A DNA stretch of 32,750 bases from NCBI GenBank assembly GCA_038496445.1, contig JALMLS010000167.1, positions 1-32,750 of the forward strand. Direction: 5' to 3'. Below the pieces are notes generated by a model. It had not been told where the DNA came from. It saw nothing but the letters and a program-made list of their open reading frames with translations, and ran no database searches. How positions within the stretch are numbered: position 1 is the first letter of the stretch; each line of letters starts with the position of its first letter. The stretch is from Trichosphaerium sp. ATCC 40318 (lineage: Eukaryota; Protista; Tubulinea). Positions 1,122-32,750 of the stretch are shown in pieces. A program made the position numbers and the translations under genes.

Positions 1122-3419
1122 ATGGATTCAAAATGGCTATTACGCGCTCTGGTTATTATTGGTTTATGCCACTCAGTTTCAGCTCTTGTAGTGACAAACG
1201 CTACAAAATACGTGGGAATGGTGCGTAATAATAATCACATTTGTCAGCTCCTTTAAAATTACTAACAACGGCTTAAAAAGAGCTTCAATACGCCTAGAAT
1301 GAGAGCAGTAGCAAAATCTTGGAGTGAAACCTTTCAAGACATATCACTTGTACTGTCAACGCGTGCAAATGTATCCAACAGGTACGCAGAAACGGTTTAA
1401 TCCAATTGCCTTTTTTGCAGTTGGCGTTTGGTTTTTTTATCTTTTGTTGTAAACCTCATTAAAGCTCACACCAGACACAATTAGGCTTGTTTTGTGGCTT
1501 GAAGAGGAAAAATTAGAAGATGACTCCGGTATAGGACGAGCGTACGAAAGTGGTGCAAAAGGAGTTATATTCATTAGCGCACGTACGGTTAACTGCCTTG
1601 TTCGAATTCTAGTCTATTTTGATCAAACAACTTTTTTCGTTTGAATTCTGGACTTGTTTAAACATGTCCTAACGCAGCTCAACAGCTATTACAATACCTC
1701 CCGTCACCTTTTATTCAAAACAAGAAATTAGTACTTAAGTGAGTAAAACGTCTAAAACTAGGTTTACGTAGGTAGAATCGCTGGGTTGTTCATAATGACA
1801 CATCCTGATAAGGTTAAAGACTATGCTGGAGTAAATTTTCCCACATTTCAAATATCTAAGCAAGACGGCCTTCAACTCGAGGAATTAATATGCGCAAATA
1901 ACGGATCAATCCAGGTTACGATTGATGGCAATGGTACGAACACCCTAACTTTTTTTTCAAGTGTCAGAAATCGTGATTCTTTTTTTTTCTTTTTTTTTTT
2001 TCTTTGATTGTGTCCCAATCGAGTGGTGTGGGCTGACTTGTTTAGATACTAATGTTTGGGAAGAGTATCTTCGAAATATAGTAAATATTCTATTATTCAA
2101 TGTATTGCTGGGTTCATTTGCTCTAATAACAATGGCGTTTGCAGCTGCCAAGTTTTATCAATATACTGTAATAAATGTACGATTTCAAGAATGTACTTTT
2201 TTTTTTGGTTTCTTAAAAGATTCTTAGGGATTGCACTGGTCTGTTTGTCAAGTATGCCTTAGCATGGAAATTTTTGCAAATTTTGGTACGCTTATACCCA
2301 CATCTAATAACACAGTCTCAGAGAGGCAGTTTTTTAATTTAAAGCTTGTGTAAACTGATTTTTGTATTTGTAGTGAGGGCGTTTTATTTGTTCATAGATC
2401 CAGTATTTACAAGGCTTATATTCCCAGATATTTTAGCAAATATATTACTATCCATAACATTCCCTTTTATGCTACTCACAACTGTATTAATTGGTTTATA
2501 TTGGTACACCGAATTTGTTGATAAGCAAATTTATTGGAAATTCTGACTCTTTTTTTTTTCTCAGGCAGGAACTAAGCAGGAGGCAATCTGTCGCTATACT
2601 GGTTTTTATTAAAAGAATGAAGATACCTTTCTATATTGTATTCTGTACTCTTCTATTATTTGATATCGTTTCTGCTAGTATGAGGTCTATAGTACAGGTA
2701 CGTCAATGGTTTTGCGTTCTTGAATATAGTCAGTTTCACTGAACCTTGTTTAGTCGATTGGTGAACAAATGGTGTTTGCTGCATCTTCGATTTACCTTAT
2801 ACTCACTATTCTTATTGTTATTTTTTTCCTTTGGGCTGGATCAGCTATTTTAAGTAAGCTCGAGGTTCCGTCTGATTCTCAATCAAAACAAAACAAGAGG
2901 TTGAAAAGGCTCAGACTTGTTACGATTCTTATCATGTCAAGCGCTATTTTTCAAGTTGTTCCCATAGTTGCTGTAGCTATTACATTATCAACAGGTCTAA
3001 TTTGGTACCTTTGAATATTCTAAGAACTAAACAAAGTCTTCGTAGTCTTCATAAACATTTTCTCTTTTTTTTCTTGTTTTTTTTTATTCACGTTGTTTTA
3101 ATGACTTTTTTGTAGGGAGTATCCTGAGCTATATACTACTTCTTGGTTCGTTTTCTATTTTTGTATTATTGCTACAAGTTTTATTCAAATAATGGCTTGG
3201 GGGACTTCACGTAAGAAAGGAGGAAGTACAAGAAATACTTCAAGTTATATATCAACAACACAAAGAGCCACAGGTGTTGATAAGAGTATTGCTGACGCAT
3301 CTAATTTTAATAATAATAACACTTCTGGTACAGTTACTTCTATACCAGTTGATGATGAAACTAAAACGGTAAATGGCAAGGATGAAAAGGAGTCTGTTGA
3401 TAGTCTTGAAAACTGCTAA
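1122..3419 (+). CDS. Signal peptide + protease-associated (PA)-like domain + multi-pass (about 7 TM) membrane protein with S/T/N-rich cytosolic tail
   Basis: Signal peptide MDSKWLLRALVIIGLCHSVSA. PA-like motifs RAYESGAKGVIFIS and VNFPTFQISKQDGLQLEELI...VTIDG. Hydrophobic helices follow (e.g. QVCLSMEIFANFVRAFYLFIDP, ILLSITFPFMLLTTVLIGLYW). Exons join via GT-AG introns and the stop is at 3419. Confidence 0.75.
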
Positions 3420-3774
3420 GAAAAAAACAAGGAAAAAATATAAACTCAATGTAATTATAAAATGAAATAAAAGACACAACAGTGGATAAGTCAGTTTTGT
3501 AGCAATAATTTAAAAGCATAAGTATATACTCTAATTAAAATGACAACCATTTGCAGTGTTTGACAAAGACTGCTAAAATGTCGATCTCAAGCACTAATAC
3601 CCTCAAATATTTTGTAATGCGCATCAAATAACTCTTCACAACACTCATCGAAGACATAGAAACTTGAAATTCAACAGCTACTAATTATACAATACAACGT
3701 ATATTACACTGAAACTTTAAGAATGTAATAGTTCTGAAATTTGTGCTTACAACAATCACGTTTCGTCAGAATAG

Positions 3775-4459
3775 TTAATAAATTTCAAGTGATTCTCCCT
3801 TTGGAGACCATCTTTTCGTTATGCCAACAGTGTTACCTTTATCATATGTTTTTGTTTCAGCTAATACCTTACCATACATGCAATCTTCTGGGCAGTGGTA
3901 CCTTTGAACAAAACAAATTAGTATCAAGTTTTTTTTTCCTTTTTTTTTCTTCTTTTTTTTTACCTTTTGTATTCGCCATGTAATTGATTATTGTCGTAAT
4001 GACTCGATATCCATATACTCCCATTACTAAAATACTCTATTGACGGCCCATGCTTTTTCCCTTTTACAAAATAACACTCTGATACTATATTTCCTTGTTC
4101 ATCCCATCGTCTTAAATTACCTTCATGCAACCCATTTTTTGTATAAAACTGAATTGCTAACCTTCCATTTGACCACCACCATCGTGTTACACCCTCAGTC
4201 TTATCACCTGATATCCAACTCTCACTCCTTAAATTGCCTAAGAGTTACAAGCTTGTCAGTACGGAGGTGTGAGCTTTTAGAGTATTGTACCTAATGCATC
4301 CCATTTTCTCCAATGGCCACGTTTATTCAAATTATTATCGAACCTTGAGCACGTGGCTGCTGCAAAACATAGTTCAGGCCATGCCATAAATACTTCTCTG
4401 TCCAATTCGTATATGAGACGATGAATCTCAACGGGTAGAGTCATCAGAAAAGATGTCAT
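3775..4459 (-). CDS. F-box-like N-terminus + MORN-variant (YwqK-type) repeat protein, 2 introns
   Basis: N-terminus MTSFLMTLPVEIHRLIYELD is F-box-like. The spliced product has repeats EGVTRWWWSNGRL, NGLHEGNLRRWDEQGNI, KGKKHGPSIEYFSNGSI, NNQLHGEYKRYH and KGNTVGITKRWSPKG. Stop at 3775-3777. Confidence 0.8.
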
Positions 4460-4791
4460 TTCGCTCGAACCTTCTTTTAGTTGTTTTAACGCTTTTTCGC
4501 TTTACACGCTATAGTATGAGCGTAGACGACTTACCAATCGTCCAAATAATAACTGGGCGTACTGTAGCCCAAAAGTAGAGCGGGTGGTGCTAATTTAGCG
4601 GTTGGAACGTGATATTATGCAGCAAGCGTAAACCTGAAGCTACTGCTTGTTTTTTACCTGAAAAAGCGTCTACGGTAAAAATGGAAAGCGAATGTTCAAG
4701 CAAGTCGCTGTAAGTCGTTAAACATACCAGATTTGCCTGTACAAAGGTATACCACTACACCGTTGCTGTACGCTCAGTTGACTTGCTTTAG

Positions 4792-6681
4792 ATGCGAATT
4801 GCTGTTATTTTCCTTTGTTTGGCGATTGCTAGCGCTGTAGCTATGCAATCCATGTCTATCAAGCGTACTAAGCCTGGTGTAAGCACTAACGACTTGAGAA
4901 ATTTCCTTAGACTTGACCATCCTGGCAAAAACATCCCTGTGGGCGGTAATATTGTTCCTCTTGGTATTTTTTATATTGAGGTAACAATTGGCTCTCCTCC
5001 CGTCATTTTCAATGTTGCTTTCGACACTGGTACGTTTAAACGCCCACATACACCGTACGTCGCTAACAAGAACAGGAAGCGGCGATTTAATTGTACCAGG
5101 CGAAGGTTGTGTAGGATGTCATCTAGAGAGTACGTGATACCCATAAAAATGATAGTAATTGTATTAGAGGAGGGTATTTACGTTCCTGAAAACTCCACGA
5201 GCTCAAAGAAAGTTGACTGTGAATTTTTCACTTGCCCTAAATGCGTCGTACGCTCTTTATACTTTCAACACCGCTTTACTGATTAACATACTCGCTAACA
5301 GAACCAACAATGCGCTTTCAAAAACACGTACGACTTTTCGAACAGAAAACTTTCCTTTTTCGTTTTATATGGCTTTAACTGCTTGCAAATGTGACATTAC
5401 CGTGTGCTGTAGTATATGAACATATTTTAAACGAACTTGTGGAACACAGTGCCGAGAAACGACTTGATTTTTTTTTTCAAACTTTTTTTTTCTTTTTTGC
5501 TAACTTTTTTGACCTTGTAGCTACGAAACATGTAATATCACTGATCCAAACCAACCTTGTACTGTAAGCGGTCCTGTATACGAAGATGTAACTGCTCTTG
5601 CTGGTCTCAGCACACCTGTTCGCTTTGGAACAATCGTACGAGATTTGTTTTAATCAATTCAGTTGACTTACTCGTTTTTTGACCTCTAGACTTTCCAAAC
5701 AGCAAACTTTGAACAATTTTATGTCATTGATGGTGTAATTGGTTTCGCAGATAGCTCTGGTTTTGGTGTACGTTTACTTTAAGTGACAATAAGTTGTATT
5801 GAACACTAACATGATAAACAAGGCCACAACACCTTTTGCTTCATTGGCAAAAGCAGGAAAGGTCGATAATGTATTCTCATGGTGTTTTAACGCTGGTAAA
5901 TTTCCTCACTCTGGTGTTCTTACTATTGGTGGTGCTGATCCTAAATACTACACTGGTGAGATCTCATACACACCACTTACATCCGGATACTTCAAGCACG
6001 TTCACTTTATTGTGTTTCCTTGAAAATCAATAGTTTTTTCTTACTTGTTCCTAGTGGCTACACTATTGAACCACAGGTTTGAGCCTTGGTCAAGACTCTA
6101 TCAGATCTAGTAGTGCTGGTACGTAGTTGTATAAACGAGTTATACAGCAGGTTTTTTGTTAAATGTTTGATATTAGAGTACATTATTGATAGTGGTACCA
6201 ATACCTTGCTTCTAAGCCAAGATGATTACCAATTGATCAAAAAGCAGTTCATTGGAAACTGTAATGGTGTCAGGTTACCTGGTATCTGCAACAGTGGAAA
6301 GACTTTCTTTGATGGTGTTTGCTTTGAGGTAAAAAAACCAAAAAACCAAACAAACTTGACACACGAGCTAGGTCTCTGCTGATGAGATGAAAGATTTCCC
6401 AACAGTATCAATGAAATTCTCTGGTGATGTAACCATGACAATGAGTGCTGAAGAGTATCTCTTACCAGATATTAAGAAAGGTAAAGAAACGTCAACTTTT
6501 CTTATTTTTTTCTGACTCCTTGTTTACAGGCGGTGACTACAAATGCTTTGGTATCCTTCCTAGTTCAATTCCTATTATTGGTGATGTCCTCATGAAGCCA
6601 TACTACACCGTTATCGACAATGCACAACAAAGATTCGGATTTGCTCCTGTAGATCGCACTGCTTGCTTAAAAGGAGTATAA
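4792..6681 (+). CDS. Secreted pepsin-family (peptidase A1) aspartic protease, multi-exon, with one apparent 1-nt frame break near 6070
   Basis: Signal peptide MRIAVIFLCLAIASAVA. Both catalytic motifs are present: FNVAFDTGSGDL (spliced) and YIIDSGT. Also FSWCF, GVLTIGG...YYTGEISYTPL and C-terminal IIGDVLMKPYYTVIDNAQQRFGFA. Confidence 0.93.
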
Positions 6682-6899
6682 ATCGCAAATAAACATATTT
6701 TTCTCGACATTGTTTTTCGTAGCGACTGCCTAAGTTTCACTGGTAGTTACATGCGTTCAGTTTTGGTCAAGTTAAATCTTTGCCAGTTGAAACTACAAAA
6801 TAGTGTTTGGATAGATAGACAGCGTCATAATTACCATGTTGTAGATGAATACGCCATTATACGCGCATTGTAAGTTAATATAAGCTTATACGTTTGAAA

Positions 6900-9189
6900 A
6901 TGTTAAATGTCACAGCTAGGAGATTGCCAAGCGCACTTGTGAACGAAAATATCATTAAAACACGCTTTAAACGTACAATAACGAAAAAAAGACGTACCAA
7001 GGTACCAAGTGGATATTGGGATAGCAAAGACAATCAACGCACTTTTTTTGCCCATGTAGAAGAGGAATTAGGCATTACAAAGCATGAACAGTGGTATTCA
7101 GTGTCAACAAATGATATTGCGTCTTTGGGAGGCAAAACAATGCTGTTAAGGTATTAATACGCGTCGTGACGCCCTTACAACTAGTTTGAGGCAAAAACTG
7201 CTTTTTTGATTTGTGATGCTTATTTGTTAGTAGATATAGCAATTCCCTGTATAAAGCTCTATGTACATTATACCCAAAGGTTAATTGGATTAAATGGCGT
7301 TTCGTGTACGAAATTCCACTTCTTTTTTCCAAGTTTTTTTTTCTTTCCTCTCTTCTCCGTTGTTCTGTTCTGAACATGATTTTATTGATACTCTAATAGA
7401 AAATTACATTCTCCAGATAATCACAGGGTTCAGATAAACATATTAGCGAAGGATATGAATGTTAAAACACTTGATGATTGGTATAATGTTAACTACAGTG
7501 AAATACGAAATAGAGGGATAAGTAATATTCTTACAAAGTGAGTTAGTTGTTGCACACGTGATATTGAAAAATAACAATATTTATTTAGATTCAGTGGGTC
7601 TATATATAGGTGTCTTGAGGCTATATATAGCGATTATGATTGGCAATTATGGAAGTTCAAGTGCGTTCTTTATCCTTGAGATTTTTTTTATTTTTTTTTT
7701 CGGGTTCAACAGTTGATATAGATTCCTAATTCTTTTAGGAATCCTCCAAAAGGAGCTTATGGTGAAGGAAAATCTCAGATGTCTGCATCTGAAGATATGG
7801 CAGAGCACCTCGGTATTAAAACATTTGATGGGTGGTACAATATATCAGGTAAAGATTTTCGGCGTAATGGCACTCTATCTCTACTCTCAAAGTAAGTTTG
7901 CAGAAACGCATACTACTTAATTACCACCTAACATTTTTAAAAGGTACGACATGGATATTCCTTCAGCACTTCAATCTCTCTACCCAGTATACAATTGGGA
8001 TGACAGTCAGTTTAAGTAAGTTCAAACTTAACTGATTTCTCATTTTTGGTTCTCACCAGTTTGCAAAGGTTCAAAAAGCGTATTATGACGCCTATGGCTA
8101 AGCTATGGAAATCAGGTGATCATGTCAATACGATGAGAATTCTTGAACAAAAACTTAAGGTCTATGAACCTGAATCATGGTACGTCATACAAAGCAGCTC
8201 TAATGTTAACTTAAGGAAGGTATCGAATATCACTTGCGCAGCTTTTAGAGCATGCTGGTGGTTCTGGTGTATACTTGGCGTTTCCCAATGTACTATCCTT
8301 GATGTATCCAAATGTTAGATGGAGATGGAAATCATTTGCTTTGAGTAACAAGAAGTCTAGACAAAGGTAGCAACTTTTTAGCTATGTTTTTTTTTTGACT
8401 TGTGCAAGAATTTTGATTGAGAGCATCCGCAAGGTTCTACCTCAAGCTAAAGTTCTAGAAGAGCAATACATAGATGTAAGAGAGTATCAAAAATCTCTAC
8501 TAAGTGTAGATGCGTTTTTACCAGAGTATAATCTAGCGTTTGAGTATCAAGGTAATTTCTAAAAAAAAAAAAAAGAAAGCGAATCAAAGTTGTTTAAGCA
8601 CGCTAAAAATACAACCAAGGTGAACAACATTTTCATGATGTACTTCCGCATGATGTTCCTTCGGTTGTAAGTAAGGCAAGGGATGAAGAAAAGAGACACT
8701 TACTAAAAGAATCTGGTACTACAATGCTTCAAAGAAAAACCATTCTAAAACGGCACTAACTTTTTCATTCGAAAAGGCGTAACACTTGTGGCTATTCCGT
8801 ATTGGTACCTTTTTTAGAATTTTTACATTTTTAAACTACTACAGTATTATACAATATCGTCATTATATTTTAAAGACAGACACTGTTCTGCTTACTTCAA
8901 TATTGTAACATAAAAATAACACCTTTTTTTTTTTAAACTATGACGCATCTCTATTTGTTTTTGACTGCTTTTTTGCAGGTGGAATGGTGATATAGATGTT
9001 CTAGGTGCCACAATAATGTATTATAGAGAAGATATAAAATGTAATTGCAACTGGAAGGACGCTGAGCCTATTCTTATTGACGAGTTTGATGAGAACCCAA
9101 AATTTAAAAGAAAAATAGGAACTGTAATGAACCCTGCAAAGTTACTTGCTTGTACGTCTATTTTTTATCCCCATTGTAGTTATACATAA
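6900..9189 (+). CDS. Protein with 4 tandem ~60-aa Trp-rich repeats and a C-terminal PD-(D/E)XK-like (DUF559/Vsr/RAP-type) nuclease domain; possible mitochondrial presequence
   Basis: Hand splicing of about 11 GT-AG introns gives an uninterrupted frame. Repeat consensus is L.IK...WY.V....I...G...LL.RY..SL..AL..LYP...W..W.F. The C-terminal domain reads LSVDAFLPEYNLAFEYQGEQHFHD...RDEEKRHLLKESGVTLVAIPYWW. The N-terminus is Arg/Lys-rich. The exact 3' end is uncertain. Confidence 0.8.
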
Positions 9190-9449
9190 CATAATGATAT
9201 CATTATAGAACAATATCATTAACTCAAAATACCACCGAGCAATAACCTGCTTTCTTGTATAATTAAAAGATTTAACAAAACGTTGATGTGAAAAGTCTTG
9301 ATTAAGAGAAAATCAATGAATGCTTTAATCAAAGTTACGCATTTATTGGTGGCGTCATAAATCAAATCTTATATGGAAAATAATATCTTGAACTTATCAC
9401 GTGATGTGTAAAGGATACAACACACAAATAGCATGTGATGCATGTATCA

Positions 9450-10620
9450 AGGAAAATAAGTGTTGCATAGTACGTGTGACACTGTGTCAAGTTCTGTTAT
9501 GCTTTCTTTTAACGTATGACTGCTTTTAGTGTCATCATAGAAATAGCATCCCATTTTAAGCTGGTTAAGTCCATACCCAATAGGCTCAATAGTTGATTTT
9601 TTGGACCAATCAACTTCTTTGCTCAACTTTTAAAGAAAATTAATTGGAAAAAGAAATAACAAAGAGACTAGCACTGCATCCATACTTTTTCACGAATTTG
9701 TTCCTCGATAAGTGCCAGGTCTACAATAGAGTTTAGAGGCCTCATAAATAGCGTATAAATTATTACTTAATTCACTAAGAGGCAGTAGTAGATGTAGAAT
9801 GGCAAAACATGAAGAGATTTTTAACTTTTGAAAGACTTGCCTGTTTCTGCATTAGCAGGTCTTATAATGAACTGAGCTTTGCATATAGGGAACTTTTTCT
9901 GCTTTTGTATGTTTGAGGAATCATCCTACAAAATATCACATGAGCGATGACAAGTTTCGTAGTCAGTTTTTTTTTGAAGTACTTTTTTTTCCCAAGTGCG
10001 TTGTTCTTCTTTACTGAAAGACGATACTTGGTTAAACCACCGTAAAACGTTTTGTAATCGTTGATCTATCACCTTAGGCAGGTGTTCAAGTGCTTTAACA
10101 TCTGCTGACGTTGGTTCAGAGCTATTATCATAATATCAACAGCCACAGCTTTTATATTGCATTATTTTACCCGTTTATGTATTTGTTAGTGCTTAGATGC
10201 GTATTCAGTGCCTCAAGTCCCTAAATCTGCGTTAGATTCAAACCATTCAATGAGCGCTTTCTTTATCATCGTAGTACTGTTTAGCCATTGTTGATGAGTT
10301 GGTTTATCGGGTTTCCGTTGCACGATTTAAGTCAACCAATGTAGATAGATACGCAGATAGTCAAAATCGTTCACGGTATTTTTCCAAACACAAAGTTTCC
10401 TTGTACTCCACTGCTCTCTAAGTGCCTATATCGCTATGTGCAGAAGTTTTGTAGCTCCTGAGGGTAAAATTATCTCTGTACGTGCGTCTTATTGGCCCCA
10501 CTGGGAAAAAAGTGCATGTGTATGGTCGTAATGGCTCCAAACCATTGCCAGTACGCTGTAAACATCCAAAAAAACTATCTCTGGAAATTTTGAAGGAGTC
10601 TGTACGTAGGGAAACGAAAT
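9450..10620 (-). pseudogene. Possible decayed coding sequence of unknown family
   Basis: Long near-open minus-strand frames are broken by isolated stops (e.g. ...SAHSDIGT*RAVEYKETLCLEKYRERF*LSAYLSTLVDLNRAT; YYDNSSEPTSADVKALEHLPKVIDQRLQNVLRWFNQ). No intact gene model could be built. Confidence 0.3.
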
Positions 10621-22114: not shown

Positions 22115-22804
22115 ATGACAACTAAACGCAAACAAGTACACTAAAAATTATATTCCCTTCGTTTTAAACAGCTAACCAAAGCATAGAATAATCCAATTGA
22201 AAGAAAACTGCACTTATTCGATCTACCATTTGAATTGCATCTTGAAATTGTTGATTTGGACCCTGAAGTGTATATTAAATGGCCTCTACTATCTAAACAA
22301 AGTGCCAGTATGAGATTTGATTTCTCCTCTCAATCAGTAAAGAAGAGCGGTAAATGGAAGAAATTCAGCCGTGAAGAAGGAAGCTTGAAAAAAAAGCAAA
22401 GGCAAGACTGGGTTAATGATAAATTCCAAGGAAGTTACAAAACGTGGCATGAAAATGGACAGTTGAAAAAACACTTTCATTACTCAAAAGGAAGACTTAA
22501 TGGTCATTGTACTGAGTGGCGTGATAATGGTAATTTACGTATGCAAGCTTATTGTATAAATGGTAAAAGACATGGTGAGGTATTAAAGTTTCATAACAAT
22601 GGTCAAATTGAAGCACATTGTATATGTATCAATGGTAAGATTGACGGATCCTACAAAGAGTATCATGATAACGGTCAGCTTCGTCAACAATTGCAATACG
22701 TCAATGGCATGCGCCAGGGACTATTCAAAATGTGGAATTCTGAAGGGTACTTGGTTGATAAAGGTATCTTTGTTAACAATCAATTTATTGGCAAAGCAAA
22801 TTGA
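22115..22804 (+). CDS. F-box-like N-terminus + MORN-variant (YwqK-type) repeat protein, paralog of 3775-4459
   Basis: Short first exon MTTKRKQ, a GT-AG intron, then NNPIERKLHLFDLPFELHLEIVDLDPEVYIKWP. Five 24-aa repeats G.Y..WH.NGQL......NG follow. The N-terminus aligns with LPVEIHRLIYELDREVFMAWP of the other gene. Confidence 0.85.
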
Positions 22805-22948: not shown

Positions 22949-24707
22949 TTACATAATCTTATCTGGTTTAAGTACAACATGAGCAGTTGTTCCTGTATTC
23001 ATTGGTCTCTTCTCAAAAGGAAATATTCTTGCTCTGAGTGACTGTTTAAAATAAAACATAAGTATTTGCAACAGTAACTATTTTTTTGTTGTCATCTAAA
23101 CGTACTGGTACATAGTATGCGACAATCATCGCAACAACGATCAATAGTACAATCAATATTGCTATGCTTATGACCAAGTACTTCCACCAATCTGAACACG
23201 TGTTATTGATGTTCATAGCAACTGAGAACTTTGAAGATGTCTGTTTGATTGAAGATTCTACTTTTTTACAACCATCACTATGAACAAAAAGTATATCTGA
23301 GAATCCTTCTGTTGAATTAATACAACTGTATTCAAATAAAGTGCGTTCTGTGTCTTGTTTCTCATCTGTATGGACAACAAGTGTTCCAGAAGGAGTAAAA
23401 CAACCTTGATTTAACTTGTATGAGCAAAAGTATGAGTATGACGTTTCAATACCTGTAATGTTGACATGTCCTCCTTCACGAAAAGTGACCTTGTGGTTTG
23501 GTGTGAGTATGTAATTTCCGTTGAATACTGTAGTTCCAATTATATCAATAGTTAGTGGCAACTCGACAGTTGTAGGACTCATTGGCTCAGTTGGCGTGTC
23601 TATCTGAAGAGAACTAAATGAAATTAGGAGAAGAAACATGATTCCGTTCGTACGAATTTCGTCTTTCAACTTCTTGGCCGAGAAAAGACACACTCACATT
23701 GTTCCTTGAAATAACTGGATAATAGTCGTTGTCAAAGTTAAAAAAGTAAAGTAAATCAGGATTCGTTGTATTGGGAGAGTATGCCAATTCAAGAAGCTCG
23801 TCATCTGATAGCTCCCTTTTTTAAAACAATTACAAAATAGTCAAAAGGTTGTTGTAGTACTTATTCCAAATACTCAAGTTGTCAATGTCACCCTATAACA
23901 GTACTTAGCGCAGGCAATAGCAAATGAAGCTTACAGAAAATCCAAACTTAACTTCATCCGAGCGGTCACTGACCACACCACCAATCGTAAAGTGTCCCTT
24001 TTGTGAATTACTAAGCAGCATCTACAATATCATTTCATAGCGTACCTTGTCCGAGTGAGAGAGGGGAAGCGTGGCGTTTACACTTTTAACTATTGTATTG
24101 TTCGATATTGTCTTCATTGTTATTGCATTGCTGGCTAAATCACGTGATAAAAAAACATAAATCTGCTTTTGGTTAACAACTCGTCTCGTATATAAACTTG
24201 CTTACCCATTCATTTATTGGCACTTGTGGGTGAATCGATGCATCGAAAGCACCGTCAGGATATTTTATCCTCTGCATGTCGTGGAAGGTATGGAACGTGA
24301 GTTGGCTGGTAGAGCTACCAAGAGTTCCAACAGAAAACATGAACCCATTATCTTCAAAAACAGAAGACATTGTCGAAAATATAGTATAAACGCAGTCTCC
24401 ATTGAAAGAACATTCACTATTCACGTTAGAAAAAGAAAAACCGCAGATAAAAACCAACGAGAACCTGTCAAAGTTTACCCATGCGCCAACTGAAATGATA
24501 GAGTAGTTACTGAAATCTTCGCCTTGATAACGAATGCTACCATTACTTGGTGCTTGAATGCTACCACTGCCTGAAAAATGAGCAACCATATCACCAGGAT
24601 AACCTAAAGTAAGCTTGTTAGGTTTTTGTTTACAGATAGTAATATGGCTTTAGCGTACAATGAGTTGGGGTAATCGTGATCAAGCAGAATAGTAGTAGTA
24701 AAATCAT
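22949..24707 (-). CDS. LamG/concanavalin-like single-pass surface protein, copy A
   Basis: Signal peptide MILLLLFCLITITPTHC. LamG hallmarks SVGAWVNF, VPINEWIYV and FTIGG...GFSGDIDNLSIWNKELSDDEL. Short P/T linker, Cys-containing membrane-proximal domain, TM WWKYLVISIAILIVLLIVVAMIVAYYVP, and spliced tail SLRARIFPFEKRP... Confidence 0.85.
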
Positions 24708-24884
24708 AGCAATTTGGCTATTTTTTTCGGGATGTAAAGAGGCCTCCATTCTATGTCTAAAGGCTTTTTGTGCTTTTGTATGGTTTTATGTTATCAGAAG
24801 AGAACCTAGTGGTTGTTATTGGCAGCTTACTTGAAATAGTGTGAGTCATCTAAAACCGCAAATGTGTGACTCTGAAACCTGGTT

Positions 24885-25432
24885 CTTACCAATAACTGAA
24901 GCCAAGTACTGGTAAACAAATGCGCTACCACAAATGCAAGGGTTATCAAGTGCGGGTTTTTTTTGAAAGTTTGGCGAAATTTGGCGACAAGTTCTGTTAC
25001 AGAGTCCTAACGTATTACAACACGACTGTACGGTCTTTTATTCAGTGTATGGAAGTCTGATCATTGAATGGTAATGTTAGACACTATTCTGAACATTCAA
25101 CGTAAAAAAGATCACTTTAGTGGTACGTTACGTATCCTAACACTCATCGAGCTGCTCTTGCAGACAATGTAGTGTAGCTGATGAACCGGTTGATGTGCTG
25201 ATTGACGTAACTCTAAGTTAGGTGTATACTGTCGTAATAAATAGCAGTAAGTTCAGCAGCTGCTGGCGTAATCAGGCCATTTACAGACGAACACTTATTT
25301 AGGGCCTGCGTGGGGCCTCACGTACGAAAGAGGTACGTGTCTGGGAGGAGTATGTTTAGTCAGTAAGCCAACAAATACAGACATACAAAAGGCAACAGTG
25401 AGCAAGGTGGACATTGCTAAAACACGCTTCAT
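24885..25432 (-). pseudogene. Decayed spliced gene for a signal-peptide protein, lying between copies B and A
   Basis: ATG at 25432 gives MKRVLAMSTLLTVAF|YTYLF|PAAELTAIYYDSIHLT*SYVNQHINRFISYTTLSARAAR*VLGYVT|IVSNITIQ*SDFHTLNKRP|TCRQISPNF...CICGSAFVYQYLASVI. Intron boundaries are consensus-like but there are in-frame stops at about 25213, 25144 and 25061. Confidence 0.55.
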
Positions 25433-25462
25433 TTTAGCCAATGTACATGAGTTCTTATGTAC

Positions 25463-27309
25463 TTATCTTGTCTCCATCGCTACATGAGTTGTTGTTCCTG
25501 TATTCATTGGTCTCTTTTCAAAAGGAAATATTCTTGCTCTGAGTGACTGTTTAAAAATAAAACATAAGTATTTACAACAGTAACTCTTTTGTTGTTGTCA
25601 TCTAAACGTACTGGTACATAGTATGCTACAATCATTGCAACAACGATCAATAGTACAAGTAATATTGCTATGCTTATGACCAAGTACTTCCACCAATCTG
25701 AACACGTGTTATTGATGTTCATAGCAACTGAGAACTTTGAAGATGTCTGTTTGGTTGAAGATTCTACTTTTTTACAACTATCACTATGAACAACAAGTAT
25801 ATCTGAGAATCCATCTGTTGAATTAATACAACTGTACTCGAATAAAGTGCGTTCTGTGTCTTGTTTCTCATCTGTATGGACAACAAGTGTTCCAGAAGGA
25901 GTAAAGCAACCTTGATTTAACTTGTATGAGCAAAGTATGAGTATGACATTTCAATACCTGTAATGTTGACATGTCCTCCTTCACGAAAAGTGACCTTGTG
26001 GTTTGGTGTGAGTATGTAATTTCCGTTGAATACTATCATTCCAATTATATCAATAGTTAGTGGCAACTCGAAGCTTGTAGGCCCACTCGTTGGTGCCTGT
26101 GTTGGTGCCTGTATTGGTACACTAGTAGGACTCATACCGGTAGGAGGAGTAGGCGGTACAGTTGGTGATTCTATTTGAAGAGAACTAAATGTATAAGGAT
26201 CACATAAAAAGAACTTTCGTACGAATTTCGTCTTTCAACGTCTTGGCCGAGAAAAGACACACTCACATTGTTCCTGGAAATAACTGGATCATATCCATTG
26301 TCAAAGTCAAAAAAGTAAAGTAAATCAGGATTCATTGTATTGGGAGAATATGCCAATTCAAGAAGCTCGTCATCTGATAGCTCCCTTTTTTAAAACAATT
26401 AAAAAATAGTGAAAAGGTTGTTGTTAGTACTTGTTCCAAATACTCAAGTTTTCAATGTCACCCTACAACAGTGGTTCAATAAGATATAGAGATTAAAAAC
26501 AAATAGCTTACAGAGAACCCAAATTGAGCTACAGTACCATTACGTAGACAACCAATCACAAAATATCCCTTTTTGTTGTTATAAGACTCATTACTACTAT
26601 TTAAAGGATTTTATACCTTGTCTGAGTAAGAGAGGGTTGGTGATGCGTTTACGCTTTTGACTACTGTGTTGTTTGATATTGTCTTTAGTGAAATCTTATT
26701 TTTGGATATATCACGTGAATAATAAACATAAATCTGCGGTAAATATCAGAACATATCCATTACAATCTTACATACCCATTCATTTGCAGGCACTTGTGGG
26801 TGGATGGAGGAATTAAATGCCTCGTTTTTTGGATATTCGTCCCAATTGCCATTGTAATTCTCAAACGCGAGTTGCCGGTTGGAATAGTGGGGAACGAAAC
26901 TACCAACGCTACAGAAACCACCAGTGTCACCACGGTTAAATGATATTGTCGAAAATATAGTATGTAGCCTGCAATCCTCAGAAACACAGTCCCTATTCAT
27001 ATTAGAATAGAAAAGCGTATTAAAAGCAACGAACTTGTCAAAGTTTATCCAGGCGCCAATTGAAATGATAGAGTAGTTACTGAAATCTTCGCCATCAAGA
27101 AGAATACCACCATTTTCCATTCCATCGTCATCACCTCTACCTGAAAAGTGTGCTGCCATACCGAGTGGATTGCCTTGTTAAAGAAAGTGGGTTATGTCGT
27201 AACAATATTTTCGAATTAATTAACTACGAAACATACCACCAGTGCATACTGTTGCCGTAAAAAACGTGACCACGCATAAATACTTCAAAAACACCTCTCT
27301 GTTATACAT
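25463..27309 (-). CDS. LamG/concanavalin-like single-pass surface protein, copy B
   Basis: Leader MYNREVFLKYLCVVTFFTATVCTG. Same exon structure as A, with a P/T-rich stalk (PTSVPIQAPTQAPTSGPTS), TM, and tail SLRARIFPFEKRPMNTGTTTHVAMETR*. Confidence 0.87.
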
Positions 27310-27668
27310 TTAATACTCTGGGTTGGTATCGTTTAGTGCTTGTTATGATGACAGTGTTTGAAGTGAAGAGAACTAGAGTTACCTTAACTAACAAAATTAG
27401 TATTTGTTTTGTGAACAACAAAAAACAAAGATGTCTTGGCGATGAGCCAATGAACAGGTTGATTAATACCTATGACATTTTTTTCCAACAATTCGAAAAA
27501 ATTACCGGCCTTAGATTGTTCAGAAGTTTGTAATGCCATCATTAGCACAAAGTATGACTGTCGGTATTAATTTACTCAGCGTTTGTTGCGAAAAAGTTGT
27601 AAAAGTACGCGCACAACGTTTAACACATACAAGCCTTTTTTCTTTGGCGGCTAAAACTTGTAGGACGA

Positions 27669-27677
27669 TCACGTGAC
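27669..27677. promoter_or_regulatory. Palindromic TCACGTGA (E-box/G-box-like) candidate element ~360 bp upstream of copy B; also at 30822-30830 (copy C) and 14638-14645 (F-box/NHL gene)
   Basis: Exact motif seen at equivalent positions upstream of B and C. Function is inferred only. Confidence 0.3.
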
Positions 27678-28258
27678 AATTTCGTTTTTTTGGTTTTTTT
27701 TTTTGAATGAATTAAATATGTCTGGCAGTTCGGCGTTTGAATTAGTGAGACCGAAGCTGAACTCGAACTCAACAAAAGAAACACCAACACGATTAACGAT
27801 GGCTAATATCAACAACACCCACAAACCCAACCAACTTGAACACCCTATTAGTAATGTACAACAAACACAATACCCCTAACCAAATTCAATCAAAACTAAC
27901 TAAAGAACAAGGTTGCGTCTAGTGATCAATCAGGGACACACTCAAGGGATAATGGTCACCAATCAAAGTATTACGGCACCTCGAGTGCCAAGTGATTGAA
28001 AACTATGGTCGTAGAATATTAACACCTGTAACCACCCTTACGTGAAAACTCCACAAAGTTTTTTTTTTCTCTTTCTTTTTTTTCTTGTAAAATTCTCTTC
28101 TGTACAGAAGGTATCATAATTTCGCACAAATGCACTGTAGTGTTTTAATGTACAAATATATACATAACATCAGTGCGCTATTGATAGCCACTAAGACATT
28201 GTCTTTCCTCCCAAACAGTCGCGTATTTATCGTCTAGGCGCAATGGTTATTCTAACAA

Positions 28259-28572
28259 TCAAATTAGCAGGCAAAGCGTTATAATTACATCCTCAATAGA
28301 TCCCTTAGCCTTAGTTGCTGGTATAGTTGTGTTGATGTCACTGCTGGGTTTGAGATGAAACTCAAATGGGAAGAACAAAGCTCGAAAGCGCTATGCAATA
28401 CAATTAGTATCACGTTCTATATTCACAGACGAGAACTTATATGTAGGACCTCTACACCACTAATGTACGAAAGAGGTACAGATCTGGGAGGAGTATGTTT
28501 AGTCAGTAAGCTAACTAATACAGACATACAAAAGGCAACAGTGAGCAAGATGGACATCAATAAACACCTTCA
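28259..28572 (-). pseudogene. Chimeric relic: first two exons of the 25432 pseudogene fused within an intron to an orphan copy of the last exon of gene D
   Basis: 28420-28590 matches 25280-25450. 28285-28418 matches 30955-31090. The orphan exon 28259-28390 reads RFRALFFPFEFHLKPSSDINTTIPATKAKGSIEDVIITLCLLI* behind an intact ttgcatag acceptor. Confidence 0.75.
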
Positions 28573-28596
28573 TTTAGTCAATGTACATGAGTTCTA

Positions 28597-30455
28597 TCAT
28601 CTTGTTTCCATTTCTACATGAATTCTTGTTCCTGTGTTCATTGGTCTCTTCTCAAAAGGAAATATTCTTGCTCTGAGTGACTGTTCAAAATAAAACATAA
28701 GTATTTGCAACAGTAACTCTTTTGTTGTTGTCATCTAAACGTACTGGTACATAGTATGCGATTATCATTGCAACAACGATCAATAGTACAAGTAATATTG
28801 CTATGCTTATGACCAAGTACTTCCACCAATCTGAACATGTGTTATTGATGTTCATAGCAACTGAGAACTTTGAAGATGTCTGTTTGGTTGAAGATTCTAC
28901 TTTTTTACAACCATCACTATGAACAACAAGTATATCTGAGAATCCATCTGTTGAATTAATACAACTGTACTCAAATAAAGTGCGTTCTGTGTCTTGTTTC
29001 TCATCCGTATGGACAACAAGTGTTCCAGAAGGAGTAAAGCAACCTTGATTTAAAACATGTCAGAAATTGTGCGTGTGGCGTTCCAATACCTGTAATGTTG
29101 ACATGTCCTCCTTCACGAAAAGTGACCTTGTGGTTTGGTGTGAGTATGTAATTTCCGTTGAATACTATCATTCCAATTATATCTATAGTTAGTGGCAACT
29201 CGAAGCTTGTAGGCCCGCTCGTTGGTGCCTGTGTTAGCGCCTGTGTTGGTGCTTTTGTTGGTACACTAGTAGGACTCATACCGGTAGGAGGAGTAGGCGG
29301 TACACTTGGTGATTCTATTTGAAGAGAACTAAATGTATAAGGATCACATAAAAGGAACTTTCGTACGAATTTCGTCTTTCAACTTCTTGGCCGAGAAAAG
29401 ACACACTCACATTGTTCCTGGAAATAACTGGATAATAGTCGTTGTCAAAGTTAAAAAAGTAAAGTAAATCAGGATTCGTTGTATTGGGAGAGTATGCCAA
29501 TTCAAGAAGCTCGTCATCTGATAGCTCCCTTTTTTAAAACAATTACAAAATAGTGAAAAGGTTGTTGTTAGTACTTGTTCCAAATACTCAGGTTGTCAAT
29601 GTCACCCTACAACAGTGGTTCAATAAGATATATAGATTTAAAGCAAATAGCTTACAGAGAACCCCAATCGAGCTGCACTTCCCTCACGTAGACAACCAAT
29701 CACAAAATATCCCTTGCTGTTATTAGACTCATTACTACTATTTAAAGGATTGTACATTGTCTGAGTAAGAGAGTGTTGGTGATGCGTTTACGCTTTTGAC
29801 TACTGTGTTGTTTGATATTGTCTTTAGTGAAATCTTATTTTTGGATATATCACGTGAATAATAAACATAAATCTGCGGTAAATATCAGAACATATCCATT
29901 ACAATCTTACATACCCATTCATTTGCAGGCACTTGTGGGTGGATGGAGGAATTAAATGCCTCGTTTTTTGGATATTCGTCCCAATCGCCATTGTAATTCT
30001 CAAACGCGAGTTGCCGTTTGGAATATATAGGCTTTAAACTACCAACGCTACAGAAACCACCAGTGTCACCACGGTTAAATGATATTGTCGAAAATATAGT
30101 ATGTAGTAGGCAATCCTCAGCATCACAGTCCCTATTCATATTAGAATAGAAAAGCGTATTAAGTATAAAAGCAACGAACTTGTCAAAGTTTATCCAGGCG
30201 CCAACTGAAATGATAGAGTAGTTACTGAAATCTTCGCCATCAATAAGAATACCACCATTTTCTATTCCAATATTGCCTCCACGTGAAAAGTGCGCTGCCA
30301 TATCGAGTGGATTGCCTTGTTAAAGAAAGTAGGTTTCTCTCGTAAAAAATATATTTTCGAATTAATTAACTTCGAAACATACCACCGGTGCATACTGTTG
30401 CCGTAAAAAACGTGACCACGCATAAATACTTCAAAAACACCTCTTTGTTATACAT
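28597..30455 (-). CDS. LamG/concanavalin-like single-pass surface protein, copy C (closest to B)
   Basis: Same exon structure as B, stalk one 4-aa unit longer, tail SLRARIFPFEKRPMNTGTRIHVEMETR*. Confidence 0.87.
29221..29262 (-). repeat. 12-bp coding minisatellite (APTQ-like units) in the stalk of copy C; one unit fewer in B (~26089-26118), absent in A
   Basis: gttggtgcctgt-like units repeated on the + strand. Confidence 0.7.
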
Positions 30456-30950
30456 TTATTGCTCTGGATAGTACGCTGTGGTATCTTTTAGTGGTTGCTA
30501 TGATGACAGCGTTTGAAGTGAATAGAATTGGAGTTGGCTTAACAATTGTAGTATTTGGTTTGTGAACAACAAAGAAAAATTCTTGGTGATGAAGATGAAC
30601 AGGTTGAGCCTTGCCTCTACGTATTTTTTTCAGAATATTTGAAAAAATTCGCAAAAAAAAACCAGGTTTCGAATTATTCAGAAGGTACTAGCGTGAGATT
30701 CGTCCTGTCCAACAAAAGGAGGGAACTGCTAGTATTAATTTACACAGCTTTTAAAAGTACACGCACAACGTTTTAACGCATGCGAGCCTTTTTTTTTGGC
30801 GTCTAAAACCTTGCAGCTCAATCACGTGACAAATACTTTTTTTGATTGAAAGACGACATTACGAAGCTTTTATCCTTGATGAATGCTATTTTATAGACCT
30901 AAAAACAGCAAAGCCACAAACTTGGATGAAAATATCAAATAAACACAGTG

Positions 30951-32750
30951 TTAATTTACATCCTCAATAGATCCCTTAGCTTTAGTTGCTGGTGTGCTTG
31001 TGTTGCCATCATTACTGGATTTGAGATGAAACTCAAATGGGAAGAACAAAGCTCGAAAGCGCTATGCAATACAGTCAGTATCACATTCTACTCAAAAAGA
31101 AAAGAAAAGAACTTACAGGGACAAAGACTACCAAGATCCCTATGGCGATTGCTACAGCTATAACTGTTACTGTCAAGGCTATAAGCATATATCCCCACCA
31201 ATGCAAACATTTCGAACGTATTCTCAATACAACAGAGAACTTTGAAGGCTTATACACCTGATTGTTTTCAACTGTCTTGCACTGGTCACCTTGACTAACA
31301 TCTACATCAGAGAAACCACCATCCGCAGGATCATAGCAATTATAATGAACCAAGACAACTTCTTCAAACGCCATCGTTCGCGTACCATGTAGTACAAGAT
31401 TCCCAGCAGGTTTGAAGCAACCTACAAACAGTTTTTAACAGAAACGTTCGTTGAGTGATCTGAGGTACCCGTAACGTTAAGTACACCACCAGGATGAAAA
31501 CTTATTGTATGATTCTGCTTCAGAATATAGTTTCCTACTAGAGTAATGCTTGAAAAGATCTCAGGATCTTCTGGAAGAGATTCAACAAACAAGTGATTTG
31601 AAGGCTGTCCACCAAGAACAGAAGTGGGCTCTATTGAAGGCGCATCGGTCATTGATGTGTTGTGTCCAGGTAGATAGGGAAAAGGTGACCTGTGCAAGTA
31701 AGAAGAACTTTATTCTAAGATCAGAGATTACCCAACTAAAACTTGTGGTTGTATTTGTCCTATAAACGATATATTTGCTTGACCGACAGGATACCGTGGA
31801 TTGAATTCATCTTCAAAATCAAAGTGGTATAGTTTTGAGGTATTTCGCGTGGATAACGAGTCTCTTGCAATCTGTTGAATCTCATCTACTGATAAAGCTC
31901 TGTTCGAAAAGAAAGTAAGACAAAGATTAGTCATACTAACGCACGTGCTCCATATCATCAAGTCATCTATTTCACCCTTAAAAGGAAATTAATTTACTGT
32001 TTTATGTGTAACTTAAGTACACTGAACCCAAACTTGCACGTCGTTTTGTTAAATCTTTGTGAAACACCACCTATTGTAAAATATCCCTAAATTTATTAAA
32101 CCTCCTCTTCTACTGGAAGTTATTTTAGGGCGAACGCACCAATTCAGACTTTTCTATTGGTACTCCTACAGATCCTGAATAATTACCTCGCAGCGAAGTG
32201 TCATTACTCAATACTACTATGTTCACCATCCCAGAAGCCTGATGTCTCTCAAAATATACATACATCTACAATTGTTTAGTGTTGCGGAAAGTTTTTCTGC
32301 AAACGTACCCATTCGCTTTCCTTAATAGCGTTCGTGTCTGTAAAATATTGTTCAAACTCATTATCTTGGCCTGCTACTGTGACTGTTTCAATAAATAACT
32401 GGAGTGATGACAGGGTAGGTACTATATGGCCTATGCCATAAATAGCACCGTATTGAGCGCCCAGACCGTTTGGTTTTGTAGATAAAATAGCGAACAATTG
32501 GCAATCTGAACCAACACAAGATCTTTTTACTGGATAAGTCACGTGATAAAATAAAAAAAAACGGCCTAAAATGAACAAAAAACAAGCATAGTCGCCTACA
32601 CTTGCCTGTTGAAGTTTATCCAAGCCCCTATTGACAACACTGGATAATCTCTAAAATCGGTACCAAAAACACGTATAGCGCCGCATCCTGTATCATAGTC
32701 GTCACCGTCACCACCAAAGTGAGCTGAAGAGCCTCTTGGAAAACCTGCGC
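30951..32750 (-). CDS. Divergent LamG/concanavalin-like single-pass surface protein, copy D (5' end beyond the window)
   Basis: SAHFGGDG...LSIGAWINFNR, ESEW, GYFTIGG...GFSGEIDDLMIWSTALSVDEI, GGVLNVTGCFKPAGNLV, TM WWGYMLIALTVTVIAVAIAIGILVVFVP, and tail RFRALFFPF... Intron positions match A-C. Confidence 0.85.

What the first reader, a model, noticed from the sequence alone, without database searches (positions are those of the whole stretch)
22949..32750. Tandem array of LamG-like surface proteins with hypervariable patches: candidate diversifying recognition system
Seen: four same-strand paralogs, each with signal peptide, LamG-like domain, P/T stalk, Cys domain, TM and a short R..FPF tail. 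B and C are near-identical over long exon and intron stretches, yet differ in tight clusters of amino-acid-changing substitutions in the distal domain: GRGDDDGM vs RGGNIGI, CVSEDCRL vs CDAEDCLL, SFVPHYSNR vs SLKPIYSKR, RNGTVAQF vs REGSAARL. A and D differ most in the same segments, while the membrane-proximal domain, TM and tail of A-C are almost invariant. Known: LamG/ConA folds bind ligands through loops, and variable-tip/constant-base tandem arrays are typical of allorecognition, adhesin and variant-antigen loci (e.g. Dictyostelium Tgr proteins). Inference: a rapidly evolving prey, pathogen or kin recognition receptor family in a protist.
Basis: partly seen in the sequence, partly recalled or inferred. 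Interest (0 to 1): 0.8.

Follow-up and report, generated by a model that had tools for sequence, protein, structure and literature searches.

The report
Diversifying LamG-head surface receptor gene array
Four neighbouring genes of an unnamed, apparently non-photosynthetic marine protist encode membrane proteins whose lectin-like head changes fast in a few short loops while the membrane anchor is kept uniform, as in a cell-surface recognition repertoire; what they recognise is unknown.

Summary
Window 22949-32750 carries four minus-strand, 10-exon genes (A-D; D lacks exon 1 because the contig ends). Each encodes signal peptide, Laminin_G_3 head, Pro/Thr stalk, 4-Cys membrane-proximal domain (predicted short beta-helix), TM helix and a short tail with an FPF motif.

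Amino-acid-changing differences are clustered (p<0.0002).

B and C are separate loci, not haplotypes placed in tandem. A second contig (C191) carries the same four-gene array at 94-96% identity, and public transcripts confirm B, C-like, D and paralogue I.

The family has at least 11 loci. A search of 1.84 billion proteins found relatives only in this organism.

Diversification is partly supported. Site models find 2-4% of head codons with omega about 9-14 (LRT 19-33) and none in the anchor. However, whole-gene dN/dS is 0.3-0.5, synonymous changes co-cluster with the patches, and gene conversion is pervasive. Conversion swaps head cassettes and homogenises the anchor, introns included.

The ligand and any prey, pathogen or kin role are untested. 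No 3D mapping of the head was possible. Another first-reader note (s1-397238) flags a similar array elsewhere in this genome.

The parts
22949..24749 (-). Gene A, 10 exons, 455 aa: 24749-24659, 24603-24465, 24416-24206, 24162-24046, 23997-23935, 23892-23861, 23815-23654, 23613-23453, 23404-23106, 23041-22949
   Evidence: Clean ORF with GT-AG at all nine introns. The near-identical copy A' on C191 keeps the structure. BLASTP to transcript protein P0002 gives E 7e-81.
25463..27309 (-). Gene B, 10 exons, 468 aa: 27309-27237, 27173-27035, 26992-26776, 26733-26617, 26568-26512, 26462-26431, 26384-26223, 26184-25958, 25910-25612, 25546-25463
   Evidence: Model. Spliced contigs of public run X1 confirm intron 3 (26775-26734), intron 4 (loose ends at 26618/26568) and intron 8 (25957-25911); one 99%-identical contig lies on B.
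28597..30455 (-). Gene C, 10 exons, 471 aa: 30455-30383, 30315-30180, 30131-29915, 29872-29756, 29712-29656, 29606-29575, 29528-29367, 29328-29090, 29043-28745, 28680-28597
   Evidence: Model. Its counterpart C' on C191 groups with C, not with B, at 87 of 107 informative sites. C-type spliced contigs occur in X1.
30951..32744 (-). Gene D, exons 2-10 only (exon 1 lies beyond the contig end): 32744-32606, 32522-32309, 32265-32140, 32086-32021, 31976-31945, 31899-31732, 31689-31469, 31421-31117, 31061-30951. Intron 2 (32605-32523) is GC-AG.
   Evidence: Transferred from the complete copy D' on C191. The MMETSP transcript protein P0001 is 100% identical over 159 aa and has introns 1-3 removed.
26223..27173 (-). 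B exons 2-7: Laminin_G_3 (ConA-like lectin) head plus a short conserved post-LamG segment, residues about 26-266
   Evidence: Homologous to P0002 residues 39-223, which match PF13385 at E 2.4e-10. ESM features agree.
25612..26184 (-). B exons 8-9: Pro/Thr-rich stalk, 4-Cys membrane-proximal domain (predicted short right-handed beta-helix) and TM helix
   Evidence: Family alignment. AF2 model of the homologous part of P0002 has pLDDT 73.5, with 10 strands plus a helix. Beta-helix matches: Z 9.1 to 7jvi and 7.6-8.1 to autotransporter C-terminal regions; TM 0.52-0.64 to PATR, pertactin and PEP-CTERM models.
25463..25546 (-). B exon 10: short cytoplasmic tail with the conserved R..FPF motif; same exon in A (23041-22949), C (28680-28597) and D (31061-30951)
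   Evidence: Conserved in all 16 modelled family members.
27118..27141 (-). Patch 1 in B (C: 30263-30283). Contains codon R37 (27138-27136), which has high posterior for omega>1 in the 7- and 12-gene sets.
   Evidence: The region has indels and as many synonymous as nonsynonymous changes (6N/5S). The C and C' versions are unique in the family.
26965..26988 (-). Patch 2 in B (C: 30104-30127). Contains codon R79 (26970-26968), four different residues among seven close genes.
   Evidence: Posterior 0.96-1.0 in every taxon set.
26875..26901 (-). Patch 3 in B (C: 30014-30040). Contains codons V104 (26895-26893), H106 (26889-26887) and Y107 (26886-26884).
   Evidence: Posterior 0.83-1.0. Pairwise B-C is 7.2N/1.8S. 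Variants have no donor elsewhere among the family loci fetched.
26521..26544 (-). Patch 4 in B (C: 29665-29688): exchanged cassette
   Evidence: B's version is 97% identical to gene E/E2 on C386/C342 but only 89% to its own counterpart B'.
26273..26308 (-).
   Evidence: Identical DNA in A and C, in B and A', and in B' and C'. Within-array site patterns occur only here.
26993..27034 (-). Intron 2 of B (A 24417-24464; C 30132-30179; D 32523-32605). In-frame and stop-free in A, B and C, so the naive ORF reads through it.
   Evidence: Frame-shifted or stop-bearing in most paralogues. Removed in transcripts P0001 and L019. Possibly retained in one C-like X1 contig.
28285..28419 (-). Relic of a D-type last exon downstream of gene C
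   Evidence: 90% identical to 30956-31090, which overlaps D exon 10. Also seen downstream of C'.

Best explanation
This is a real tandem array of four expressed genes. It belongs to a lineage-restricted family with at least 11 LamG-headed loci, plus at least 12 further loci that share only the anchor.

Each gene encodes a type I membrane glycoprotein. From the N-terminus: signal peptide, Laminin_G_3 (ConA-like lectin) head, Pro/Thr mucin-like stalk, a 4-Cys domain predicted to be a short beta-helix, a TM helix, and a short cytoplasmic tail with a conserved FPF motif.

The genes evolve in two regimes.
- The anchor half is kept uniform among A, B and C. Gene conversion homogenises it (introns included), and purifying selection acts on it (omega 0.04-0.15).
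- The head diverges in short patches. The exon 2-3 patches carry unique, multi-state codons with omega well above 1. The exon 5-7 patches are swapped as cassettes between paralogues.

Inferred, not shown: the proteins sit at the cell surface and act as a repertoire of recognition or adhesion receptors. Their ligand-binding loops would be under diversifying pressure from a variable partner, such as glycans on prey, parasites or viruses, or conspecific cells.
For: Gene models and intactness of 16 family members.

Transcript support: P0001 (MMETSP) equals D; L019/P0002 is a spliced cDNA of paralogue I at 99-100% identity; X1 contigs carry B and C-type splices.

Domain calls: Laminin_G_3 at 41.2 bits; ESM features 0.96-0.98; beta-helix-like anchor.

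Lineage restriction: a 135-position profile against 1.84 billion proteins found only P0001 and P0002 as true hits. The word search and the metagenome scan were blank.

Independent second array on C191 with the same order. B groups with B' and C with C' at 87 sites, against 13 and 7 for the alternatives.

Selection: M2a over M1a in the head gives LRT 19.2, 33.0 and 32.7, with the same codons (79, 104, 106) recurring; the anchor gives LRT 0. Null simulations gave a maximum LRT of 6.3 on a single tree and 9.2 on a mosaic tree.

Gene conversion: Sawyer-type runs at p<=0.0005 for ten gene pairs; a 0-difference stretch of about 500 nt in C/C' flanked by windows with 17-24 differences per 100 columns; cassette sharing; A-B 95% identity over the 3' 613 nt against 73.5% in the head.
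Against: Whole-gene dN/dS is 0.3-0.5, and most patch windows have omega at or below about 1 with few changes.

Synonymous differences co-cluster with nonsynonymous ones. Recombination is pervasive, which inflates site-model tests. Adjacent multi-nucleotide replacements, such as 8 changes in 10 nt in patch 3, can mimic positive selection.

The site models are my own implementation, checked by only 18 simulations.

No structure of the head could be obtained, so clustering of the sites on one surface is untested.

Surface localisation, ligand and function are all inferred. No population or second-strain data were available.
Confidence: 0.55

Rival explanations
1. This is an ordinary lineage-specific adhesion or glycan-binding family. 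The variable patches are simply unconstrained surface loops, and the apparent omega>1 is an artefact of gene conversion, micro-conversion from unsampled copies and multi-nucleotide mutations. There is no diversifying pressure.
For: Overall omega is 0.3-0.5. Synonymous changes co-cluster with the patches. Conversion tracts are strong. Mosaic simulations raise the null LRT to 9.2. Loops of LamG domains vary in any family (general knowledge).
Against: M1a already allows a neutral class, yet M2a fits much better in three taxon sets (LRT 19-33). The same test gives 0 on the equally recombining anchor half. Sites 79, 104 and 106 carry 3-4 different residues among five genes that are 5-15% diverged. 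Patch 1-3 variants have no donor among the fetched family loci.
Confidence: 0.27
2. The window array and the C191 array (and the single-gene version on C386/C342) are alleles of one hyperpolymorphic locus. The patch differences would then be allelic specificities kept by balancing selection, as in allorecognition or mating loci.
For: The arrays are 94-96% identical with the same gene order. A/B/C gene bodies differ 4-10%, while D/D' and the 5' flanks differ 1-2% and the shared flank about 2%. One contig has one chimeric gene where the other has four. C and C' each carry a unique patch 1.
Against: Relative to the shared flank (window 1-10.6 kb) the two arrays lie on opposite sides and in opposite orientation, which fits inverted duplicate arms of one locus. 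Three versions of that flank exist, so ploidy or strain mixture is unresolved.
Confidence: 0.15
3. This is an assembly artefact: B and C (or the whole array) are haplotypes or collapsed repeats wrongly placed in tandem.
For: The assembly holds uncollapsed haplotigs (paired hits). The window is a short contig that ends inside gene D.
Against: A second, longer contig has the same four genes in the same order. The B and C 5' flanks differ by 27-34%, while each matches its own counterpart at 1-2%. There are 87 orthology-type sites against 20. Distinct B-type and C-type transcripts exist.
Confidence: 0.03

Closest known systems
Laminin_G_3 (PF13385) / concanavalin A-like lectin-glucanase superfamily domains
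   Same: The head of the family matches the profile nearly end to end (positions 4-151 of 151) above the curated cut-off on the paralogue transcript P0002. The usual C-terminal motif of the domain is conserved in A-D.
   Different: The domain is fused to a Pro/Thr stalk, a beta-helix-like 4-Cys domain, a TM helix and an FPF tail. This architecture has no relative outside this organism among 1.84 billion representative proteins. The head is too diverged for a half-domain profile to find any other LamG protein.
Neurexin-type LNS/LamG domains
   Same: In both, a LamG beta-sandwich varies in loops. From general knowledge, variation and splice inserts in LNS domains sit on one rim that binds ligands. 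Here an in-frame, stop-free micro-intron (intron 2) lies after the conserved GAW strand and may be retained in one transcript contig.
   Different: There is no sequence relationship beyond the superfamily. Here variation is germ-line, between paralogues, and not shown to come from alternative splicing. The position of the patches in 3D is not established.
Dictyostelium TgrB1/TgrC1 allorecognition genes
   Same: Both are type I membrane proteins encoded by neighbouring paralogues, with a fast-evolving ectodomain and a lineage-specific expansion.
   Different: Tgr ectodomains are IPT/TIG (immunoglobulin-like) repeats, not LamG. A matched ligand-receptor pair and strain polymorphism define that system, and neither could be tested here.
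Variant surface protein families of protists (for example Giardia VSPs, ciliate surface antigens)
   Same: Both have a variable ectodomain joined to an almost invariant TM segment and a short conserved cytoplasmic tail. Both form families shaped by gene conversion.
   Different: There are no CXXC-rich repeats and the family is far smaller (tens of genes, not hundreds). Several members (B, C-like, D, I) are seen in bulk transcript data, so strict one-at-a-time expression is neither shown nor excluded.
Bacterial autotransporter / PATR-type beta-helix stalks
   Same: The predicted fold of the membrane-proximal domain is a short right-handed beta-helix placed next to the membrane anchor (Z 6.6-9.1; TM 0.52-0.64). 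It plausibly serves as a rigid spacer.
   Different: The resemblance is at fold level only (8-14% identity) and the Z scores are near the background range. This is a eukaryotic type I protein with four conserved cysteines, and there is no beta-barrel.

Membership tests
Laminin_G_3 / ConA-like lectin superfamily | Match to the Pfam profile PF13385 above its gathering score | tested here: met
   P0002 (the transcript of paralogue I) scores 41.2 bits against 27.6, residues 39-223, profile positions 4-151 of 151. A-D themselves gave no hit when scanned exon by exon, but they align full-length to P0002 at E 1e-64 to 1e-84. The joined A-D proteins were not sent to Pfam.
Laminin_G_3 / ConA-like lectin superfamily | Beta-sandwich (jelly-roll) fold | tested here: inconclusive
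   The single-sequence AF2 model of P0002 failed (mean pLDDT 37). A family alignment of exon pieces could not be built correctly. ESM feature search points to LamG_3 clusters at 0.96-0.98.
Tgr-type allorecognition system | IPT/TIG (Ig-like) ectodomain repeats | tested here: not met
   Pfam finds only Laminin_G_3 in the ectodomain.
Tgr-type allorecognition system | High allelic polymorphism between strains and a co-evolving ligand-receptor pair | not testable with these tools
   Only one assembly is available. Whether the C191 copy is an allele or a paralogous arm is unresolved.
Variant surface antigen families | Mutually exclusive expression of one member per cell | not testable with these tools
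   Only bulk transcript contigs exist. B, C-like, D and I are all represented.
Variant surface antigen families | Variable ectodomain on a conserved TM segment and tail | tested here: met
   Head against anchor identity is 63% and 94% for A-B and 89% and 99% for B-C. The tail motif is conserved in all 16 members.
Genes under diversifying selection | A class of codons with dN/dS significantly above 1 | tested here: met
   M2a against M1a gives LRT 19.2, 33.0 and 32.7 in the head (omega2 9-14, 2-4% of codons) and 0 in the anchor. The null maximum was 9.2 in 18 simulations. Caveats are recombination, multi-nucleotide changes and the use of my own code.
Autotransporter/PATR-like beta-helix | Right-handed parallel beta-helix fold | tested here: inconclusive
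   The model has pLDDT 73.5. The top 11 VIA matches are all beta-helices, but Z is 4.8-9.1 and the best Foldseek E-value is 0.023. Atlas TM scores are 0.52-0.64.
Membrane-proximal autoproteolytic modules (GPS/GAIN, SEA) | Profile match to GPS or SEA | tested here: not met
   No such Pfam hit on P0002 at E up to 0.1. The predicted fold is a beta-helix, not a GAIN or SEA fold.

The most novel reading that the evidence does not exclude
The four-gene array, its 94-96% identical counterpart and the one-gene version on a third contig are haplotypes of a single hyperpolymorphic self/non-self (kin, fusion or mating) recognition locus in a marine heterotrophic protist. Identity would be written in a few LamG loop patches and re-assorted by cassette exchange between paralogues. 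This would be an allorecognition system built on a domain and in a lineage where none is known.
Probability: 0.15. Interest if true: 0.85.

Novelty: new variant of a known kind. Interest (0 to 1): 0.55.

Why it matters
Free-living marine protists must tell prey, parasites, viruses and kin apart at the cell surface, yet very few of their receptors are known.

This locus offers a concrete, compact candidate. It is a family found in one organism only, with a lectin-type head, a handful of codons that change far faster than neutral, and a visible mechanism (cassette exchange plus anchor homogenisation) that makes new head variants on a fixed signalling or anchoring base.

If the ligand could be found, it would give an experimentally tractable model of receptor diversification outside animals, plants and the classical parasites.

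If the rival is right, it is one more expanded adhesion family, and the value is mainly in annotation.

Tried and rejected
- Pfam on single exons of A, B and C gave nothing relevant.
- The word-index protein search with B exon 2-3 was blank.
- A JGI metagenome scan with the anchor profile returned one spurious TM match.
- PDB sequence searches with P0002 and with the exon 2-3 profile gave no usable template.
- AF2 on P0002 without an alignment failed, with pLDDT 37.
- Two attempts to build a family alignment from exon pieces (A2, A4) were misaligned by MAFFT and were not used for folding. The variable sites could therefore not be mapped on a head structure.
- The run index found no RNA run and only one small run. 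That run nevertheless turned out to hold spliced contigs.
- One literature search for LamG_3 families under selection in protists gave nothing relevant.
- GPS/GAIN or SEA identity of the membrane-proximal domain was considered and rejected.
- The organism could not be named. It is an MMETSP culture without light-harvesting-complex genes.
- The joined (spliced) proteins of A-D were built only inside scripts, for alignment, dN/dS, codon models and BLASTP against P0002.


Full report
**What is there**

The window is the whole of contig C336 of a 70.3 Mb, 642-contig eukaryotic assembly. Between 22949 and 32750 the minus strand carries four genes. I modelled them from three-frame reading, paralogue alignment and splice signals.

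- Each gene has ten exons with identical phases. Introns are 38-83 nt, all GT-AG except D intron 2, which is GC-AG.
- A has 455 aa, B 468 aa and C 471 aa.
- D lacks only exon 1, because the contig ends six bases into its first intron. The complete copy on contig C191 supplies that exon, with a signal peptide.

One correction to a naive ORF reading: a 42-48 nt stretch after the conserved GAW strand is intron 2. It happens to be in frame and stop-free in A, B and C. It is frame-shifted or stop-bearing in most paralogues and is removed in two public transcripts.

**Transcript support**

An exhaustive profile search returned two true hits, both from this organism.

- P0001 is an MMETSP transcript ORF, 100% identical to D over 159 aa. 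Introns 1-3 are spliced, including the GC-AG intron, and intron 4 is retained.
- P0002 is the ORF of a 1488-nt JGI contig (L019). It aligns at 99-100% to paralogue I on contig C385, as a spliced cDNA.

The one run found by the read index (X1) holds spliced contigs. They show the following:

- a piece 99% identical to B that joins exons 3-4 exactly at 26776/26733;
- loose ends that fit the exon 4-5 junction;
- removal of B-type intron 8 (25911-25957);
- C-type pieces;
- one contig that retains the 38-nt intron 7 (26185-26222).

**What the proteins are**

Exon-by-exon Pfam scans were blank. The full-length relative P0002 matches Laminin_G_3 (PF13385) at E 2.4e-10 and 41.2 bits against a cut-off of 27.6, nearly end to end. 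ESM feature search gives LamG_3 clusters at 0.96-0.98. A-D align to P0002 over about 440 residues at E 1e-64 to 1e-84.

Behind the head come four elements:

- a Pro/Thr-rich stalk of variable length;
- a domain of about 110 aa with four invariant cysteines;
- a TM helix;
- after a conserved intron, a short tail with an R..FPF motif.

The membrane-proximal part has no sequence relatives. An AF2 model built on a correct 14-row alignment (pLDDT 73.5) is all-beta. It resembles short right-handed beta-helices: 7jvi at Z 9.1, the C-terminal regions of IgA1 protease, IcsA and pertactin at Z 6.6-8.1, and PATR, pertactin and PEP-CTERM models at TM 0.52-0.64. I treat this as a tentative fold assignment.

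**Family and locus**

The head exon finds 24 places in the genome. I could model 16 intact members with the same ten-exon structure. Adding C34 and C118 brings the LamG-headed family to at least 11 loci. The anchor profile finds 37 places, and at least 12 of these loci show no LamG head.

Contig C191 carries the same four genes in the same order (D' C' B' A') at 94-96% identity.

- C191 continues, after a 13-kb segment, into sequence 97.6% identical to window 300-9986.
- Relative to this shared flank the two arrays therefore lie on opposite sides and in opposite orientation.
- This fits two inverted arms around a spacer of about 36 kb. An allelic inversion is not excluded.
- A third contig (C386) has one chimeric gene (E) in the array's place, followed by the same flank. 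C342 is its 95.7% partner.
- The flank exists in three versions, so ploidy or strain mixture is unresolved.

B and C each have their own counterpart (87 orthology-type sites against 13 and 7). Their 5' flanks differ by 27-34%, yet each matches its counterpart at 1-2%.

**How they evolve**

- Nonsynonymous differences are clustered: dispersion 2.77 for B-C, p<0.0002.
- Synonymous differences co-cluster with them: r=0.59, p=0.0002.
- Whole-gene dN/dS is 0.3-0.5. The head gives 0.3-1.1 and the membrane-proximal domain 0.04-0.15.

Identity along the genes is mosaic.

- C and C' have no difference over about 500 nt, flanked by windows with 17-24 differences per 100 columns.
- A permutation test on runs of matching polymorphic sites is significant for most gene pairs.
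- The 3' 613 nt of A and B, introns included, are 95% identical, against 73.5% in the head.
- The exon 7 patch exists in three versions shared as identical DNA between non-orthologous genes (A with C, B with A', B' with C').
- B's patch 4 matches E/E2 better than it matches B'.
- In contrast, the variants of patches 1-3 have no donor among the fetched family loci.

**Selection test**

I wrote a codon-model fit (GY94, F3x4, M0/M1a/M2a, all branch lengths optimised).

| Data set | LRT, M2a vs M1a | p | omega2 |
|---|---|---|---|
| Head, 7 genes | 19.2 | 7e-5 | about 11 |
| Head, 12 genes | 33.0 | 7e-8 | about 9 |
| Head, 5 gap-free B/C/E genes | 32.7 | 8e-8 | about 14 |
| Anchor half | 0 | 1 | none |

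- The omega2 class covers 2-4% of head codons.
- The recurring codons are 37 (7- and 12-gene sets only), 79, 104, 106 (12- and 5-gene sets), 107 (12-gene set only) and 244. Codon 263 appears in the 5-gene set.
- With separate trees per segment the signal stays in exons 2-3 (LRT 13.7, p=0.001). It is not significant elsewhere.
- Simulations under M1a gave LRT at most 6.3 on one tree and at most 9.2 when half the codons followed a swapped tree, with nine replicates each.
- Sites 244 and 263 lie in the shuffled cassette and are probably recombination artefacts.
- Sites 79, 104 and 106 carry three or four residues among five close genes.

Remaining caveats are adjacent multi-nucleotide replacements, unsampled donors and the small number of simulations.

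**Reading**

The array is real and expressed. It encodes LamG-headed type I membrane proteins of a family seen only in this organism. The head diversifies in a few loops by two routes, unique fast-changing codons and cassette exchange. The anchor is homogenised.

This is the pattern of a surface recognition repertoire. Surface location, ligand and biological role remain inference. The organism is an MMETSP culture without light-harvesting-complex genes, so a phagotroph or osmotroph is likely. That makes prey, parasite or kin recognition plausible but untested.

**Left out**

The joined proteins of A-D were used only inside scripts and were not sent to search, family or fold tools. A head structure with mapped sites could not be produced.

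Noticed in passing
window 24417-24464 (A), 26993-27034 (B), 30132-30179 (C): Intron 2 is a multiple of three and stop-free in A, B, C, B', C' and both H copies, but is broken in the other paralogues. One C-like contig of run X1 seems to run 16 nt into it. Retention would insert 14-16 residues (46 in H) into a LamG loop, a possible alternative isoform.
   Followed up: partly
window 32523-32605: D intron 2 uses a GC donor. The MMETSP transcript P0001 shows that it is spliced exactly there.
   Followed up: yes
window 28285-28419 and 30956-31090: A 135-nt relic of a D-type last exon lies downstream of gene C, and also downstream of C' on C191. This looks like a trace of an earlier unequal exchange in the array.
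   Followed up: partly
window 1-10596; C191:103700-113692; C386:16681-27283: The flank exists in three versions that are 97.6-98.3% identical to the window copy and mosaic with respect to one another. Both other contigs end near window 10-10.6 kb. This means more than two haplotypes, a strain mixture or a repeated segment.
   Followed up: partly
C386:6800-8670 and C342:1-1714: A single chimeric gene (E/E2) stands where C191 has four genes. Its head is 74-77% identical to B/C and its 3' end is like A'. This is copy-number variation at the locus. E2 is truncated by the contig start and has a frame break in the TM region.
   Followed up: partly
G000 contigs C137, C96, C138, C22, C197, C12, C29, C205, C91, C176, C18: The membrane-proximal domain plus TM 'anchor cassette' occurs at 12 or more further loci with no detectable LamG head, so other ectodomains may be mounted on the same anchor.
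   Followed up: partly
window 26185-26222: The 38-nt intron 7 of a B-type gene is retained in one 644-nt X1 contig that has the next intron removed. Retention gives a premature stop.
   Followed up: no
window 22235-22804 (+): An ORF with MORN-type repeats lies directly beyond the 3' end of gene A on the other strand.
   Followed up: no
C191:94806-100135: About 5.3 kb present in C191 but absent from C386 has many 72-92% copies across the genome, so it is probably transposable-element insertions in one haplotype.
   Followed up: no
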